A model generated the notes under the pieces. The model searched no databases and was not told where the DNA came from. It saw only the letters and a program-made list of their open reading frames with translations. 64,000 nt of DNA from Tubulanus polymorphus (Eukaryota > Animalia > Nemertea): positions 4,898,001 to 4,962,000 of the forward strand of contig NC_134031.1 in NCBI RefSeq assembly GCF_964204645.1. Direction: 5' to 3'. The stretch's first letter is position 1; the number at the start of each line of letters is the position of its first letter. Below, piece by piece: positions 5,696 through 38,600 of this stretch. The translations under genes and the position numbers were made by a program.

Positions 5696-8600
5696 CTAAT
5701 CGTCGGGTTTTTCATCTTTTCCGTTATCGCCCGTTTTGTCGCCGATGACATCTTTATCGATGATACTGGCGATCGTTGTCGCCGTCGTCGTAGACGTCGT
5801 CGCCGTTTTACCGGTCATCGCGTCGGATTTCGTAATGTCCAAAATCGACGGCGCGATGGTTTGCTTCTCTTTCTTCTCCGGATTCAGGAAGTTCTGCGCG
5901 TGTTGCAGTAACTCTTGACGCTGTTTCGCTTGTTGCGCGCGAATCGACGCCATGTTTGGCGGTCCGGCAGACAGAGGGCGCTGCGGTTGACTCTGTTGTA
6001 TGTGTTGTGATTGCTGCAATGATGTCGGTTGTTGCGGTTGTTGTATTTGCGATTGATGTTGTTGTTGTTGAATCGATTGCTGCGATTGTTGTTGCTGCTG
6101 CTGTTGCTGACGCGACAGCATCACGGGAACTCCAGCCTGCTGAATATTAGCTGCGTATCGACCCTGACCTGTGGGATGCGATCGCGGACCCAGAACGATG
6201 TTTCCGGCTAAAACGTGCGGATGACGAATCACGTTTCCTGAAATTCGTAAAACGAGACAAGATTAGCAAATTGTAAAATTGAACCGACCAATCAACATCC
6301 AATAGGGTCCCTACAGAAAAAACATTAATTTTCAAGGAGTTTTAAGGAGAAATTTCAAATTTCCAGAAAGCATCTGCATCTCTTTCATATCACAATTACT
6401 TTAGACATCTCCTAAATCAGTAAAGCTTATCTTGGTTTTGTTAGCGAATTCATATCCTGAATACTACCTAAACTCGGTTTTTAATTCGGTAACTGCCTGA
6501 TTGGATTAAAACAAATCCCAACTGCACCGATTTAGGCGTTGTTTTTCACTGTATAACTAGACAAAATTTCGAATTTTCTATTTTTCAAAATTGAAGGAGT
6601 CCTAAAAGAGTTTCAGGCATTTCAAGATCAATCACCCTTGGAAGCAACTTTCGTTCAGAAGGAGTCGTAGGGACCCTGTCAATGGAAAAATATCTAGCGC
6701 GTTAACGATTTTAGCAGAAGTCGTGAGAAATATGAAATCAAATATTACCGGAATGAAGTGGCTGAGTCATATACGTAGTGTTCATTTTAGCGGCGAAAGC
6801 TTGCGGCGGCTGCTGCTGTTGGAGCTGATGCGTCGGTTTCATGATGTTCGCCTTCGTGTTGACGTTCGACGCATCTTTCTGCTGTTTCATATTCTGTCCC
6901 TGAGTCGGCGTGCCGATCGCCTGCTGGTACAGACCGGTGTTCGTCGACAGATTTTGTGGAGGCGAGCGAATCTGGAACGCCGGGATCGCCGCGTACTCCT
7001 GTTAAAAACAAACGACATTAGAAATTATATTATCGATGTACTTACTACGATTTCGCGAAGTAAGGATCGAACGAAAAAATATCGAGGCTCAGATTTAACA
7101 AGCTCGTTTTTCTTCTTCATTAGATTCAGGTGAAGAAATTCTAATTCATCATAGCCAATCAATCGTTTTATCAGATCACTTTTATCCACTTTTGCCAATG
7201 GGTTCCCGATGTTTGAAGAGAACAAGTAATTCTACTTGAAACACATGAAGCATGAACTAGAGGGGTCACTATTCCCAATATGCATGTTTTCCTTCATTTG
7301 ATGCGCCAAGATTCAATCAATTCACACAGTCAAATACTTTAGACATAGACGAAAACTGTTTTTGCGTGCAATCTAGAAATCTGAATTAATTGCCTTAATT
7401 TTAAGCTTTCATACCAAATTCCCCATCTTTTAAACCAAAGAAAATTCAGGGTTTATCAGGTAAGTGGCCACCCTGATGGATTGTCGAAGTACAACAATTG
7501 CGCTTCATCGTTGAAATGTGTTCGTTGACCTACCTGCGAAGCACTTTGAGACGGTTTCTGAAGCGAGGCCTGTTGCATCGTGTCCTGTTGCCGATACGAG
7601 ATCGTTTTGTTCACGAGATTCAGATGATTCTGACTGGTCGGCGGCTGTATGGGTATACCGATATTATGACCCTGATTGAATCCTTGCACGGAGAACTGAG
7701 TCGGAGAGGTCACCTGCTGCATACCGGTCTATAATAGAAATTACAATGTAAATACTAAGCCACAACTCGTTACATTGAAGGTAGTATCTAATTATATCTT
7801 ACCTGAAGTCCGGAAGCCGTTTGCTGGTAAAAGCCAGTTTGTTGCAATGGTTGCTGCGGCTGAGAGAAGTATGAACTACCTTGAATCGTTTGAACATTCT
7901 GCACTTGTCTGCAACATCAAAATAAAGCCCTTATTATTATTTCATTGTGAATCTTTTTATTAAGAAAAAACCAAGTGAAGAGGACAGGTTTGTAATACTG
8001 ATTGTAATACCATAATACTGTTTGTAATACTGACCTGGGCTGTTGAACGAGATGGGAACCAATCACTTGCGGTTGATTATTCTGCGCCTGACCGGTCTGA
8101 CCCGTGCCGAGCAACTGGCTCGTACCTAACATCTGATTCGGGTCGAATTGTAAGAACAGCTGATTCGGTTGGATCGACGCGTTGCCGATCGTGGAACCGA
8201 AGTGCATCGAGTTACTGGGACCGGTCTTCTGAGTGGCGCCGGTCATACCTGTAAAATATAAAACAGTTCCCGGCTGAATGAGCGTTTGAGTAAACAAATC
8301 TCTTGAACAAATTTTACCAGTCATGCTAACAAAGAGCACACCAAGAAATTGTGACTATCGCTTATCATGTTTGCAGCAGGCTACAATATACTCGTACTTC
8401 CAGTTCCGCCATCATTGCTACTATGAATATATTTGTAGGCGGTCATTCCTATTTACAGTGAAGACATTTGCACTCCGGCACAAGGGGAAGAATGACACAG
8501 TTCCTGATTGGCTGGCAATGTTTAGTGCACTAAGTTAGTAATGGCAGTACCATCCACCAATTTGAAATACATGATCAAGGTGCTGACATTTCATTCAAAT

Positions 8601-35600: not shown

Positions 35601-38600
35601 CTCCTCAGATTCCTCTGGCAGGTCGCGATCGTACTCGTACGTTGTCGTACGGTAACGCTGTTCGTCGCGGTCGTATTCGCGGCGATCGTAATCCTGCGGA
35701 TAGCGAGGGTCGTAGTAATGCGGCGGAGGGTGCGCGCCTCGTCTCATATCTTCGTAGTGACCCTGGTAATAACTGCGCGGATCGACTTCGGGCGTTCGAC
35801 GTTCGCCGTCGTGACTATCGGACCCGGAACCGTGGCTGTCGTGTCGACCTCTTCGCGGCATTCCAGGATGCATCGGCATTCCTACAACATAAGAAATGAA
35901 ACGAGTAAGTGATCAATATCAACTGACACCGAAATGTATTGGAGTTTTTTTCCAAATATCCGAGTTATTTCAGTTCAAATGAAAATCAGCATCGAATGTA
36001 ATTTTTCAGAACGCTGTGGGATTCATTTTGTCATCATCAATTTAATCAACATTTATCTATCATAGTTTACTAGTTCAGTTATCTATGATAGTTTACTTTA
36101 TACTAGATTCTTCAATGTAAATGATTTATAGTGTCATCAGGTAAGTGGGTGATGAGTTGGTCCGCAACGTAGAACGTTTCAGAAAGGGTAATTCATATTC
36201 ATCATTTGACACTTTGGCGTCCGGTCTACCAGGTATTAGCTATTAGCACTACAGCTTTAATAGTCGACGATAGTCAGCCGTAGCCTTAAGTACCGTAATA
36301 TGGCATTAATACTGGCATGACACAAAACTGCATGACAAACTATTTGGGATAGAAAAGTCAATGCAAGCACTTAGTATACTCTTTCTTGAAATTTTAGTAA
36401 GAATTTTTAAAGGGGTTTAATTCATCTAAGGCACTTTTGAACACTTTGTATACTCGCTATGGACCCTGCAATAAGACCAGTCGGGCCAATATTTACGAGC
36501 GCGATCTTTTACCTGGCATTTGTTGGTAGCCCATAAAATGTGGCGGCGGTGGCGGCATACCCCACCTCGGGTCGTAATGGGGCGGCCACATCGGAGGCGG
36601 TTGACGCGCCAACTGAGCCTGCGGTGATGTCTGTTGTTGCTGCTGCTGCGGTTGCGATTGATTACTGTGTTGCGAACCGGTTGATCCCGGCGACGGCGGT
36701 TGACCTTGTTCTCGTTGATGACGCATCATTTGCTCTTGCGCCTGTTTCTGGAAACGCGGCGGAACGTTGCGCGCGAACTGCCTCGAGAACGTAGGTGCAC
36801 CCTGCAACACGACACAATTTTCAAATTTCAAGAATGGATCAAGAAAGTGTGCAAATAGAGACCTGCTTAGTGCTAAAACCCTGGTGGCGACAGAGTTTCT
36901 TGGTCGAAAGTTCTTCACTGGTCTCTCCTCCATTGGGAAAAAGAAACATCAAACCCGCTTTTAATGCCCTGCATGGCGCTTAGCGGGTTGAGGGTGCTTA
37001 AAATTCAATCAATTAACTGTAACAGTCAAATATTTCAGGCATAGATGAAAACATTTTGATTGAACACGTGATCTAGCTATCTCCTAAAATTCCCCCACTT
37101 TTTTTTCTTCAAAATACCACGACTTTTCCTCGATTTCTAGGCAAGTAGCCACACTGTTTTCACACTTTAGAATCAATTGGTCTGCACGTATCGGGTTAGT
37201 ATAGCTAACTGTGATGATATTAACTAAAACGTACCTGTCCTTCGCCGCGCTCTCTGTGCGCGTCGCGTTGATCGCGATATCCCGGTTTCTGATCGCGGTA
37301 CTTCGCGCCGTCTTTGTCGCTGCTTTCGCTGATACTTCGACTTTTCATCGCCTCGTTGCGGAATTTATCTTTCGCCGTTTCTTTGTCGCTGCTCTCGCTG
37401 GCCGTGCGGCTGCGCGGGTCCTCGTGATCCGTATCCTGCAAACGCAAGAGAAAACCGTTCGCTCGATCAGTTTCATTTCAAATCACAGATCAACGATTTT
37501 TCGATTACCAAGGTAACTACTTATAAATTCAAAAACATTCGGCGCATAGCAGTGATTAAACTGAATATCATACCAGGGTTCTTACGAGGTTCATATTCCA
37601 TAACTTTTCCATATAGCGAGATTATAAATTTTCCATACCCCCAAGCAACCAGTCACCAATCTTAAACGCGCAATGTAGGCCCATTCAAAGTAAAATTCAA
37701 GCGTCGACACCAACAACAATGTGTTCTCATTAAGTTAGTTATCATATGCAATGTGTAGTAAGGCATTCATTGAGGATTAAATTCAAAATAGAATAGAGAC
37801 AATTTTGCTGATTTTCGATACCCTTTCCATAGGCGTAGAGAAAAAGATAAGCTTTTCAAGGGCCTGGAAAAAAATGCCCATCTTCCAAAATTTTCAAAAA
37901 CCCATAAGAACCCTGCCATACGAAATAAAGTAAAAACACCTAAAAACAAAACCGGAAACAATAAAGACTAACTCTTCAAACCTAAGCAACATCAAACCAC
38001 CATCCAGGTTTAAATAAATACATAAAACACCAGATACAGATATTCTAGTATATCTACTAGTCTTCCCCGAGGTGGATGATACACAAGTGCCAGTACACAA
38101 CACCACAGGATTTACCGCATTAAAAAGCGCACCTTATTTCGACCACTCACTACTCTGTCCTCGAGCTGTTTAAGCTTTTCGTTCGCCGCCAATCGACGCT
38201 CCGTTTCGATCTTCTTCTCTTCCTCTTCGCGGCGTTGACGCGCTCGTTCGACGGCGGCGCTCATCTCCTCTCGCTGTAGACTACGTCGCTGGCGCCAGAC
38301 ATCATCGTCCTCGCCGTCGGGTTTACGCGCGCTCGCTGATGAAGTCGGTGGTGGCGGCGGCGGCGCCGGAGCAACCGCGGGCGCTTGACTAGACGGGGGC
38401 GGTTGAGGTACCGGCGGCGGAGGCGGTACGATCGGCTGACTGGCCGGTGGTGGCGGCTGCGGCGGAGGCTGCTGACCGGGCATCGGATGTCGCTGTCCCA
38501 TATGTTGAGGTGGATACATATGAAACGGTGGCGGGTACGGCCCCGGTCGTCCGCGATGATCGAACGGCATACGTTGACCGGGATGGCCCCGGTACATCGG

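What the first reader, a model, noticed from the sequence alone, without database searches (positions are those of the whole stretch)
7086..36213. PRRC2 is a snoRNA super-host: ~23 box C/D copies from five families
Seen in sequence: repeated intronic motifs resolve on the host strand into C/D'/C'/D cassettes (U36-like x2, U76-like x2, U48-type x8 including 2 decayed, U35-like x7, orphan x4 including 1 decayed). Guides and boxes are conserved while spacers diverge. Established: vertebrate PRRC2A/B host different snoRNAs (SNORA38, SNORD62), while U35, U36, U48 and U76 sit in other host genes. Inference: this lineage gathered and amplified rRNA guides in a translation-regulator gene, with visible birth-and-death.
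Basis: partly seen in the sequence, partly recalled or inferred. Interest (0 to 1): 0.8.

Follow-up and report, generated by a model that had tools for sequence, protein, structure and literature searches.

The report
PRRC2 introns carry 23 snoRNA genes
The introns of one protein-coding gene (PRRC2) in this invertebrate hold all of the genome's 23 copies of five small guide RNAs that direct methylation of ribosomal RNA. This is a real and unusually large case of a known layout that recurs elsewhere in the same genome, not a new kind of system.

Summary
A PRRC2 orthologue lies on the minus strand at 44348-5699 (BAT2_N exon, E 4.6e-37). Nine of its introns carry 23 sense-strand box C/D units in five families: SNORD36-type x2, SNORD24/76-type x2, U48-type x8, SNORD35/sn3071-type x7, and an orphan x4. 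Nineteen look intact, one has a mutated D' box and three are decayed.

Four families pair by 12-14 bp with the genome's own rRNA in the canonical register. The predicted sites are 18S-A688 and 28S-C1481, A1829, A2758 and C3617.

snoRNA bodies are 81-100% identical between copies, while spacers are near random (about 50%). By BLAST, no family member occurs elsewhere in the 268-Mb genome.

Copies arose by tandem duplication (147-nt period) and by copying a U48/orphan cassette between introns. One cassette was later split by a young retroelement.

The "this lineage gathered them" reading is only partly supported. PRRC2 of a sea slug, an amphioxus and two other invertebrates lacks the rRNA-guide families, but the sea slug's PRRC2 intron carries the orphan with a 15-nt identical guide.

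This scan already found large intronic snoRNA arrays on other DNA of this genome (PSMD3, RPL8, RPS18, DDX6 and others). Expression could not be tested.

The parts
5699..44348 (-). Host gene: PRRC2 orthologue, from first coding exon 44348-44088 to last coding exon 6241-5699
   Evidence: BAT2_N Pfam E 4.6e-37. Database protein P0001 (2964 aa) maps at 95-100% to 23 exon blocks. GT/AG junctions were read.
7084..7157 (-). SNORD36-type unit a, in intron 7533-6999, 85 nt upstream of the 3' splice site. The D guide has one mismatch to 18S.
   Evidence: Rfam SNORD36 59.5 bits, cut-off 30. D' guide pairs 12 bp with 28S 2754-2765.
8621..8695 (-). SNORD36-type unit b, in intron 8844-8250
   Evidence: Rfam SNORD36 64 bits. 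D' guide pairs 12 bp with 28S, giving A2758. D guide pairs 13 bp with 18S 686-698, giving A688.
11203..11282 (-). U48-type unit 1 (intact)
   Evidence: C, D' and D boxes present. Guide pairs 13 bp (11 Watson-Crick + 2 G-U) with 28S 1477-1489, giving C1481.
11429..11509 (-). Orphan unit 1 (intact). The retroelement starts about 3 nt upstream of its terminal stem.
   Evidence: 7-bp terminal stem with C, D', C' and D boxes.
11514..17636 (-). Retroelement insertion 1 (RT/RNase H ORF, about 140-bp inverted terminal repeats). It splits a U48-orphan-U48 cassette.
   Evidence: 99.3% identical to 23188-29294; inverted ends at 11542-11681 and 17630-17490. RVT_1 E 6.9e-24. At least 40 copies at 99-100% identity genome-wide.
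17665..17745 (-). U48-type unit 2 (intact)
   Evidence: 98% identical to unit 6.
18070..18141 (-). U48-type unit 3 (intact, the most diverged body; guide and boxes kept)
21200..21274 (-). SNORD24/76-type unit b, single in its intron, about 100 nt upstream of the 3' splice site
   Evidence: Rfam SNORD24 30.3 bits, below cut-off 41. D' guide pairs 13 bp with 28S 1826-1838, giving A1829.
23188..29294 (-). Retroelement insertion 2, in the intron between exons ending at 29429 and starting at 22797
31408..31481 (-). SNORD24/76-type unit a, in intron 31882-31321, 87 nt upstream of the 3' splice site
   Evidence: Rfam SNORD24 30.5 bits, below cut-off. Guide pairs 12 bp with 28S, giving A1829.
32145..32215 (-). 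U48-type unit 8, decayed (guide mutated, D' CTTA, D CCGA)
   Evidence: Alignment.
32392..32465 (-). U48-type unit 4 (C box, D box and guide intact; D' mutated to CTTA)
32505..32576 (-). Orphan unit 4, decayed (C box ATGATC, D box CTAA, 15-nt internal deletion)
32655..32722 (-). U48-type unit 5, decayed (the rRNA guide is deleted)
32810..32890 (-). Orphan unit 2 (intact)
32954..33034 (-). U48-type unit 6 (intact)
33677..33750 (-). SNORD35-type unit 1, last of the six-copy tandem array in intron 34843-33517
   Evidence: Rfam SNORD35 32.4 bits, cut-off 36. Guide pairs 13 bp with 28S 3614-3626.
33834..33907 (-). SNORD35-type unit 2
   Evidence: Rfam 31.7 bits. Guide pairs 14 bp with 28S 3614-3627, giving C3617.
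34006..34079 (-). SNORD35-type unit 3
   Evidence: 147-nt tandem period.
34153..34226 (-). SNORD35-type unit 4 (body identical to unit 3)
34300..34373 (-). SNORD35-type unit 5
   Evidence: Rfam 33.4 bits.
34471..34544 (-). SNORD35-type unit 6, first of the array
   Evidence: Rfam 29.4 bits.
35145..35217 (-). sn3071-type unit (same 28S-C3617 guide, different D guide), single in intron 35508-35010
   Evidence: Rfam sn3071 41.4 bits, cut-off 40. Both guides match the family consensus.
35961..36042 (-). U48-type unit 7 (intact), 79 nt upstream of the 3' splice site of intron 36512-35882
36131..36211 (-). Orphan unit 3 (intact), in the same intron as U48 unit 7

Best explanation
The introns of this invertebrate's PRRC2 gene are the genome's only home for five families of box C/D snoRNA genes.

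Shown:
- There are 23 sense-strand units in nine introns.
- Nineteen have an intact C box, D box and terminal stem and, where they are recognisable, intact D' and C' boxes.
- Four families carry 12-14-nt antisense elements. These pair with the organism's own rRNA so that the fifth nucleotide upstream of D' or D falls on 18S-A688 and 28S-A2758 (SNORD36 type), 28S-A1829 (SNORD24/76 type), 28S-C1481 (U48 type) and 28S-C3617 (SNORD35/sn3071 type).
- The snoRNA bodies are conserved while the spacers have randomised.

Inferred:
- The units are released from the spliced-out PRRC2 introns by debranching and exonucleolytic trimming up to the bound snoRNP proteins. Five units lie 79-101 nt upstream of a 3' splice site, near the spacing that I recall as optimal for splicing-coupled C/D assembly.
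- Introns with two to six units need extra endonucleolytic cuts between units, as in the intronic snoRNA gene clusters of rice and Drosophila.
- The RNAs then guide fibrillarin-dependent 2'-O-methylation at those five sites. The fifth family has no convincing rRNA target.

Origin:
- The copy number comes from local DNA duplication. One part is a 147-nt-period tandem array of SNORD35-type genes. The other is an alternating U48/orphan unit that was duplicated within one intron and copied into two other introns.
- Mutational decay of three or four copies followed.
- A young, high-copy retroelement then inserted twice. One insertion splits a cassette.

The same multi-copy habit is reported for other host genes of this genome, so the driver is genome-wide and not specific to PRRC2.
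For: - Host and intron positions.
- Rfam hits. The SNORD36 and sn3071 alignments match the family consensus in both guide regions.
- Strand asymmetry of strict C/D units, 15 against 2.
- Pairing with own rRNA (28S = L001, 18S = L004).
- Body identity 81-100% against spacer or flank identity of about 45-60%, except for recent duplicates. For example, SNORD36 bodies are 96% identical and their flanks 51-54%.
- All families are confined to this gene genome-wide.
- Tandem and segmental duplication.
- Retroelement.
- Known layouts: 'intronic gene cluster ... rice and then Drosophila' (PMC2780460) and the 'one snoRNA per intron rule' in animals (PMC11028025).
- Same habit elsewhere in this genome: unchecked scan notes.
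Against: - There are no RNA data.
- Eight of the eleven Rfam-recognisable units score below the curated cut-off (SNORD35 x6, SNORD24 x2).
- The U48-type family has no Rfam match at E<=10, and the orphan units have only chance-level matches to unrelated families.
- The D' boxes of the SNORD35-type (CATA) and SNORD24/76-type (TCGA/TTGA) units are degenerate.
- In my shuffle control, which counts G-U pairs as full pairs, runs of 12-13 occur in about 5% of shuffled guides. Complementarity alone is therefore weak evidence. The case rests on agreement with the known family guides and on conservation.
- Body-restricted gene conversion could mimic purifying selection.
Confidence: 0.8

Rival explanations
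1. Only one copy per family, or per intron, is a working gene. This would typically be the unit about 80-100 nt upstream of the 3' splice site. The other copies would be unprocessed duplicates on their way to decay, and the count of 23 would overstate the functional complement.
For: - Animals predominantly follow one snoRNA per intron (PMC11028025).
- Three or four copies are visibly decayed.
- Units 79-101 nt from a 3' splice site exist for four families.
- There are no expression data.
Against: - Upstream units in the arrays keep their boxes, guide and terminal stem although their spacers have diverged to about 50% identity. Neutral duplicates would decay like the spacers.
- The SNORD35-type array has no unit at the optimal distance; the nearest is 160 nt away.
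- Similar arrays recur in other host genes of this genome.
Confidence: 0.12
2. The association is ancestral, not newly gathered. PRRC2 already hosted these snoRNAs in the lophotrochozoan or bilaterian ancestor, other lineages moved or lost them, and the nemertean only amplified them.
For: - An Elysia crispata PRRC2 intron carries a C/D unit (L007:9601-9671) with a 15-nt guide stretch identical to the orphan family's. The expected number of such chance matches in that locus is about 1e-4.
- Elysia also has a weak U48-guide-like relic at L013:28322-28374 (nhmmer E 0.029).
- Amphioxus PRRC2 has an intronic C/D unit with a 7-bp stem (L008:9093-9158).
- Human PRRC2A hosts SNORA38.
Against: - No SNORD36-, SNORD35- or SNORD24/76-type unit or guide occurs in PRRC2 of Elysia, amphioxus, L010 or L011, nor within 10 kb of the gene in the first two.
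- The Elysia intron position differs from the nemertean ones.
- The Elysia U48-like stretch has no D or D' box.
Confidence: 0.2
3. The clustered units act mainly in cis or as longer RNAs, not as rRNA guides. Examples would be sno-lncRNAs capped by two snoRNPs in one intron, or modulators of PRRC2 splicing and abundance.
For: Four introns hold two or more units, which is the layout that yields sno-lncRNAs in mammals (reviewed in PMC11028025).
Against: - Spacers are not conserved.
- The guides are exactly those of conserved rRNA methylation guides.
- These are the genome's only copies of the families, so the guide function must be supplied from here.
Confidence: 0.05
4. Part of the copy number is an assembly artefact, from a wrongly expanded tandem repeat or haplotype duplication.
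For: Two SNORD35-type units are identical in the body and 95-97% identical over the whole 147-nt unit. No reads could be laid on the region.
Against: - All other copies differ by many substitutions and have different spacers.
- The two retroelement copies have different flanks.
Confidence: 0.03

Closest known systems
Intronic snoRNA gene clusters of rice and Drosophila melanogaster
   Same: Several sense-strand box C/D genes sit in one intron of a protein-coding host, built by tandem duplication. Units must be separated before trimming (PMC2780460).
   Different: The lineage is a different phylum (spiralian; earlier notes say nemertean). Here five families lie in nine introns of one host, and these are the genome's only copies of those families.
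Vertebrate multi-snoRNA host genes (GAS5, RPL13A, RPL7A, SNHG1) and the SNORD115/116 arrays
   Same: One host transcript supplies many C/D snoRNAs. SNORD36, 35, 24/76 and 48 are the same guide types by target site. Tandem amplification occurs as in SNORD115/116.
   Different: Vertebrates keep one snoRNA per intron. From my own knowledge, not verified here, these families lie in RPL7A, RPL13A/RPS11, GAS5 and SNHG32. Here they share PRRC2, with up to six units per intron.
Human PRRC2A with SNORA38 (and PRRC2B with SNORD62)
   Same: An orthologous host gene family carries intronic snoRNAs (PRRC2A/SNORA38: PMC5025248).
   Different: The snoRNA families differ and each is present as a single copy. 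The SNORD62/PRRC2B link is from memory and no paper was found.
Other intronic snoRNA arrays of this same genome (PSMD3 16, RPL8 13, RPS18 8, DDX6 7, IPO5 6, EF1-beta 5 copies)
   Same: Same genome, same layout, same mode of amplification, including alternating two-family units (scan notes; not re-tested here).
   Different: PRRC2 has the most copies and the most families noted so far. It also shows inter-intron cassette copying dated by a retroelement insertion.
SNORD83 (Rfam RF00137), an orphan C/D family
   Same: The Elysia homologue of the orphan unit scores 31.1 bits against SNORD83. It shares the AUCACCC core of the D guide with the family consensus.
   Different: The score is below the cut-off of 35. 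The nemertean units gave no SNORD83 match at E<=10. Membership is not established.

Membership tests
Box C/D snoRNA (general) | C box RUGAUGA near the 5' end and D box CUGA near the 3' end, brought together by a short terminal stem | tested here: met
   Met for 19-20 of 23 units. 15 pass the strict scan with stems of 4-7 bp, against 2 on the opposite strand. The rest were read in the alignments. Three units fail on boxes or guide and are called decayed.
Box C/D snoRNA (general) | Antisense element of at least 10 nt ending next to D or D', placing the target nucleotide opposite the fifth position upstream of the box | tested here: met
   Met for four families against the genome's own 18S and 28S, with 12-14 bp. 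Not met for the orphan family: its best match is 12 bp with 3 G-U pairs at 18S-G1350, within the range of the shuffles.
Box C/D snoRNA (general) | Stable RNA of about 60-100 nt bound by fibrillarin, NOP56, NOP58 and SNU13 | not testable with these tools
SNORD36 (RF00049) | Score at or above the Rfam gathering cut-off, with both guides conserved | tested here: met
   64 and 59.5 bits against a cut-off of 30. Both guide regions match the consensus.
SNORD35 (RF00211) / sn3071 (RF01166) | Score at or above the Rfam gathering cut-off | tested here: inconclusive
   The unit at 35147-35216 passes sn3071 (41.4 against 40). The six tandem units reach 29.4-33.4 bits against 36 for SNORD35, but they carry the family's 28S guide.
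SNORD24 (RF00069) / SNORD76 | Score at or above the Rfam gathering cut-off | tested here: not met
   30.5 and 30.3 bits against a cut-off of 41. They work like U76/U24: the guide places 28S-A1829 in the GUAGUAGCAAAUA motif. Family membership is not shown.
SNORD48 | Rfam match, or sequence homology beyond the guide | tested here: not met
   No Rfam match at E<=10. Only the guide and predicted site (28S-C1481 in GGCGCUGUGGG) correspond to U48. The equivalence with the human site is from my memory of the human U48 guide.
PRRC2 (BAT2) protein family | N-terminal BAT2_N domain in a long, low-complexity protein of about 2000-3000 aa | tested here: met
   BAT2_N E 4.6e-37. The 2964-aa product P0001 maps to the window. 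Its best full-length relative is Elysia PRRC2.
Intronic snoRNA gene cluster | Two or more snoRNA genes in the sense orientation inside one intron of a host gene | tested here: met
   Four introns hold 2, 4, 6 and 6 units between mapped exons.

The most novel reading that the evidence does not exclude
The orphan family may be an ancient PRRC2-resident C/D RNA. It is shared by a nemertean and a gastropod, and perhaps echoed in amphioxus. Its invariant 15-nt guide contains ACUUAC and, together with the D box, the U1-like ACUUACCUG. It has no rRNA target, so it could act on something other than rRNA, such as 5' splice-site-like sequences or another non-coding RNA. A weaker extension is that U48, U36/U24 and U76 lie, from my memory, in the same human paralogy regions as PRRC2A, PRRC2B and PRRC2C. 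That could reflect an ancestral linkage which the nemertean preserves inside the gene.
Probability: 0.1. Interest if true: 0.7.

Novelty: new member of a known kind. Interest (0 to 1): 0.42.

Why it matters
- It adds the largest and most mixed example so far to a pattern in this genome: animal introns carrying several snoRNA genes, against the vertebrate rule of one snoRNA per intron. A spiralian must therefore be able to cut multi-snoRNA introns apart.
- Five rRNA methylation guides depend on a single, non-ribosomal host transcript. That makes PRRC2 transcription a potential bottleneck for ribosome modification in this animal.
- The cassette split by a dated retroelement gives a clean timeline for snoRNA birth and death.
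- The 15-nt guide shared with a sea slug identifies a conserved orphan snoRNA whose target is worth finding.

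Tried and rejected
- The 381-aa low-complexity exon found no relatives in the word search.
- Second guides: the D guides of the SNORD35-, U48- and SNORD24/76-type units and the D' guide of the orphan have no rRNA complement of 8-10 nt or more.
- Orphan target: a whole-genome search for the complement of its guide, with up to one mismatch, gave only the snoRNA loci themselves plus control-level noise.
- Orphan and 28S: the 15-nt complement to 28S 2494-2508 lies across the D' box and D'-C' loop and falls in a GC-rich expansion segment. 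It is broken in unit 1. I left it unexplained.
- Extra units: a relaxed scan of the gene found no further convincing C/D units.
- Retroelement: the tyrosine recombinase expected of a DIRS element was not detected by Pfam, so I call the element only DIRS-like in architecture.
- Synteny idea: no Rfam snoRNA lies within 10 kb of PRRC2 in amphioxus or Elysia.
- Amphioxus unit: its alignment to the orphan is too weak to claim homology.
- Literature: no paper was found linking SNORD62 to PRRC2B, or listing the vertebrate hosts together.
Exon mapping used the database protein P0001. Vertebrate (possibly human) PRRC2 loci were not fetched.

Full report
**Observation.**
An Rfam scan of the window at gathering threshold gives three minus-strand hits: SNORD36 at 7084-7157 and 8621-8695, and sn3071 at 35147-35216. 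A permissive scan adds six SNORD35 hits at 33674-34543 (29-33 bits, cut-off 36) and two SNORD24 hits at 31410-31480 and 21202-21273 (30 bits, cut-off 41).

Repeat finding recovers two further families that lack a convincing Rfam family. My own strict scan required a C box, a D box 45-125 nt downstream and a terminal stem of at least 4 bp. It finds 15 units on the minus strand and 2 on the plus strand.

| Family | Copies | State |
|---|---|---|
| SNORD36-type | 2 | both intact |
| SNORD24/76-type | 2 | both intact |
| U48-type | 8 | five intact, one with D' mutated to CTTA, two decayed |
| SNORD35/sn3071-type | 7 | all intact |
| Orphan | 4 | three intact, one decayed |

A relaxed scan found no further convincing unit in the gene.

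**Host gene.**
The ORF at 44348-43986 (minus strand) is a BAT2_N domain (E 4.6e-37). A search with that exon returned a 2964-aa protein, P0001, which is identical over the exon. P0001 maps at 95-100% identity to 23 exon blocks from 44348 down to 5699. Splice junctions read from the sequence are canonical. I did not build a spliced model by joining exons; the mapping used the database protein.

The 23 units lie in nine introns:
- 36512-35882: orphan 3 and U48 unit 7.
- 35508-35010: the sn3071-type unit.
- 34843-33517: six SNORD35-type units.
- 33311-32113: U48 6, orphan 2, U48 5 (decayed), orphan 4 (decayed), U48 4 and U48 8 (decayed).
- 31882-31321: SNORD24/76-type unit a.
- The intron ending at 21099: SNORD24/76-type unit b.
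- About 18200-11014: U48 3, U48 2, a retroelement, orphan 1 and U48 1.
- 8844-8250: SNORD36-type unit b.
- 7533-6999: SNORD36-type unit a.

Five units lie 79-101 nt upstream of a 3' splice site (U48 7, SNORD24/76 a and b, and SNORD36 a). From my own knowledge, this is close to the optimum for splicing-coupled C/D assembly.

**Function.**
I took the organism's own rRNA from its rDNA: 28S is L001:1501-5729 and 18S is L004:1501-3512. The predicted targets are:

| Family | Guide | Pairing with own rRNA | Predicted site |
|---|---|---|---|
| SNORD36-type | D' | 12 bp with 28S 2754-2765 | 28S-A2758 |
| SNORD36-type (unit b) | D | 13 bp with 18S 686-698 | 18S-A688 |
| SNORD24/76-type | D' | 12-13 bp with 28S 1826-1838 | 28S-A1829 |
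| U48-type | D' | 13 bp (11 Watson-Crick, 2 G-U) with 28S 1477-1489 | 28S-C1481 |
| SNORD35-type | D' | 14 bp with 28S 3614-3627 | 28S-C3617 |

The SNORD36 and sn3071 alignments match the Rfam consensus in both guide regions. From my memory of the yeast and human sequences, not checked with a tool, these sites correspond to yeast 18S-A619 and 25S-A2220, 25S-A1449 and 25S-C2959, and to the human U48 site.

The second guides of the SNORD35-, U48- and SNORD24/76-type units have no rRNA complement.

My shuffle control counts G-U pairs as full pairs. Under it, runs of 12-13 arise in about 5% of shuffled guides, so complementarity alone is not decisive. The argument rests on agreement with known family guides and on conservation.

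**Selection.**
snoRNA bodies are 81-100% identical within families, while the spacers and 60-nt flanks align at about 45-60%, which is the level of unrelated sequence. The exception is recently duplicated pairs. For example, SNORD36 bodies are 96% identical against 51-54% for their flanks, and SNORD35-type bodies are 85-100% identical against 49-60% for their spacers. This pattern argues that most copies are maintained, although gene conversion limited to the bodies cannot be excluded.

**Exclusivity.**
BLAST of one member of each family against the whole 268-Mb assembly finds matches only inside this gene. PRRC2 is therefore the only detectable source of these five guides.

**History.**
- The SNORD35-type array has a 147-nt period with 96% matches over 2.7 units.
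- The U48-type and orphan units alternate. This points to tandem duplication of a two-gene unit.
- That cassette was then copied between introns. The stretch 32656-33034 matches 11197-11517 plus 17624-17745 at 92-95%, and 36033-36212 matches 11331-11510 at 96.7%.
- The copy at 11197-17745 is interrupted by a 6.1-kb element at 11514-17636. The element has an RT/RNase H ORF and about 140-bp inverted ends.
- A second copy of the element, 99.3% identical, sits at 23188-29294 in another intron.
- The element family has at least 40 copies at 99-100% identity genome-wide, so both insertions are recent and independent.
- No tyrosine recombinase was detected. I describe the element only as DIRS-like in architecture.

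**Relatives.**
The same search gave PRRC2 proteins of other animals, and four of them had retrievable gene loci:
- Elysia crispata: L007 and L013, assembly identified through PMC13673630.
- Branchiostoma belcheri: L008 and L012, identified through PMC13350694.
- Two further invertebrates: L010 and L011.

None has a SNORD36-, SNORD35- or SNORD24-type unit or guide. This holds inside the gene and, for the first two species, within 10 kb of it.

Elysia nevertheless has a C/D-like unit at L007:9601-9671 with a 5-bp terminal stem, a C box, D' and C' boxes and an unusual CTGG D box. Its D guide shares 15 consecutive nucleotides with the nemertean orphan. By my estimate, about 1e-4 such matches would be expected by chance in that locus. 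The unit lies in a different intron position and scores 31.1 bits against SNORD83, whose cut-off is 35.

Two weaker signals remain open:
- A U48-guide-like stretch without D boxes lies in another Elysia intron (E 0.029).
- Amphioxus PRRC2 has one intronic C/D unit with a 7-bp stem. Its guide touches the same 18S stretch as the orphan's best, weak rRNA match, but the alignment is too poor to call homology.

PRRC2 was therefore already a snoRNA host before nemerteans and molluscs diverged. The four rRNA-guide families look like later arrivals in this lineage, or losses elsewhere.

**Context.**
Earlier notes of this scan, which I did not re-test, report multi-copy intronic snoRNA arrays in PSMD3 (16), RPL8 (13), RPS18 (8), DDX6 (7), IPO5 (6) and EF1-beta (5) of the same genome. 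They name the species as the ribbon worm Tubulanus polymorphus. This changed my reading. The amplification is a property of the genome, and PRRC2 is its largest noted example, not a special translation-linked collector.

The layout itself is known from rice and Drosophila (PMC2780460) and departs from the animal rule of one snoRNA per intron (PMC11028025).

**Limits.**
The human host genes of U35, U36, U48 and U76, and the SNORD62/PRRC2B link, are from memory; only SNORA38/PRRC2A was confirmed. Vertebrate PRRC2 loci were not fetched.

**Verdict.**
This is a real and well-preserved snoRNA host locus: 23 copies, five families and nine introns. It is a new and extreme member of a known kind. The idea that this lineage gathered the guides is only partly supported. 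The cross-phylum orphan snoRNA is the most interesting loose end.

Noticed in passing
window 11514-17636 and 23188-29294: Two 99.3%-identical copies of a 6.1-kb retroelement with an RT/RNase H ORF and about 140-bp inverted terminal repeats. It belongs to a very young family with at least 40 copies at 99-100% identity across the genome. No tyrosine recombinase was detected by Pfam.
   Followed up: partly
window 11429-11509, 32810-32890, 36131-36211; L007:9601-9671: The orphan unit's D guide plus D box reads ACUUACCUG, the same as the 5' end of U1 snRNA (lead from scan note s1-511950). The Elysia homologue keeps ACUUAC but reads ACUUACUGG. No genomic target with one mismatch or fewer to the 14-nt guide core was found.
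   Followed up: partly
window 32847-32861 and 36168-36182 (orphan units 2 and 3) against L001 28S 2494-2508: A 15-nt complement (14 Watson-Crick + 1 G-U) links the D'-box/D'-C' loop region of the orphan to a GC-rich 28S expansion segment. It is outside the canonical guide register and is broken by one substitution in orphan unit 1.
   Followed up: partly
L008:9093-9158 (Branchiostoma belcheri PRRC2 intron): A well-formed box C/D unit with a 7-bp terminal stem and no Rfam family at E<=1. Ten nucleotides of its D guide complement the conserved 18S GGGUGGUGGU stretch.
   Followed up: partly
L007:6773-6843 (Elysia crispata PRRC2 intron): A second C/D-like unit (SNORD110-like, 33 bits, below the cut-off of 64) with a 12-bp perfect complement to the nemertean 18S 1317-1328.
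   Followed up: no
window 49116-61440: A tandem array of five intronless rhodopsin-type (Srw/Srx-like) GPCR genes on the plus strand, 89-95% identical to each other, upstream of PRRC2.
   Followed up: partly
window 61954-62871: A 918-bp pure (AC)n microsatellite. It accounts for the extreme skew and for the apparent ORFs in all frames there.
   Followed up: yes
window 7313-7361, 10259-10397, 19408-19475, 29698-29765, 34623-34822, 37009-37156: A short interspersed repeat recurs in several PRRC2 introns at 66-84% identity. It is unrelated to the snoRNAs and is probably a SINE- or MITE-like element.
   Followed up: no
window 32244-32362 and 488-601: A hairpin-forming repeat (85% identical copies; weak plant-miRNA-model hits only) lies between decayed snoRNA units. 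It is probably a small foldback element.
   Followed up: no
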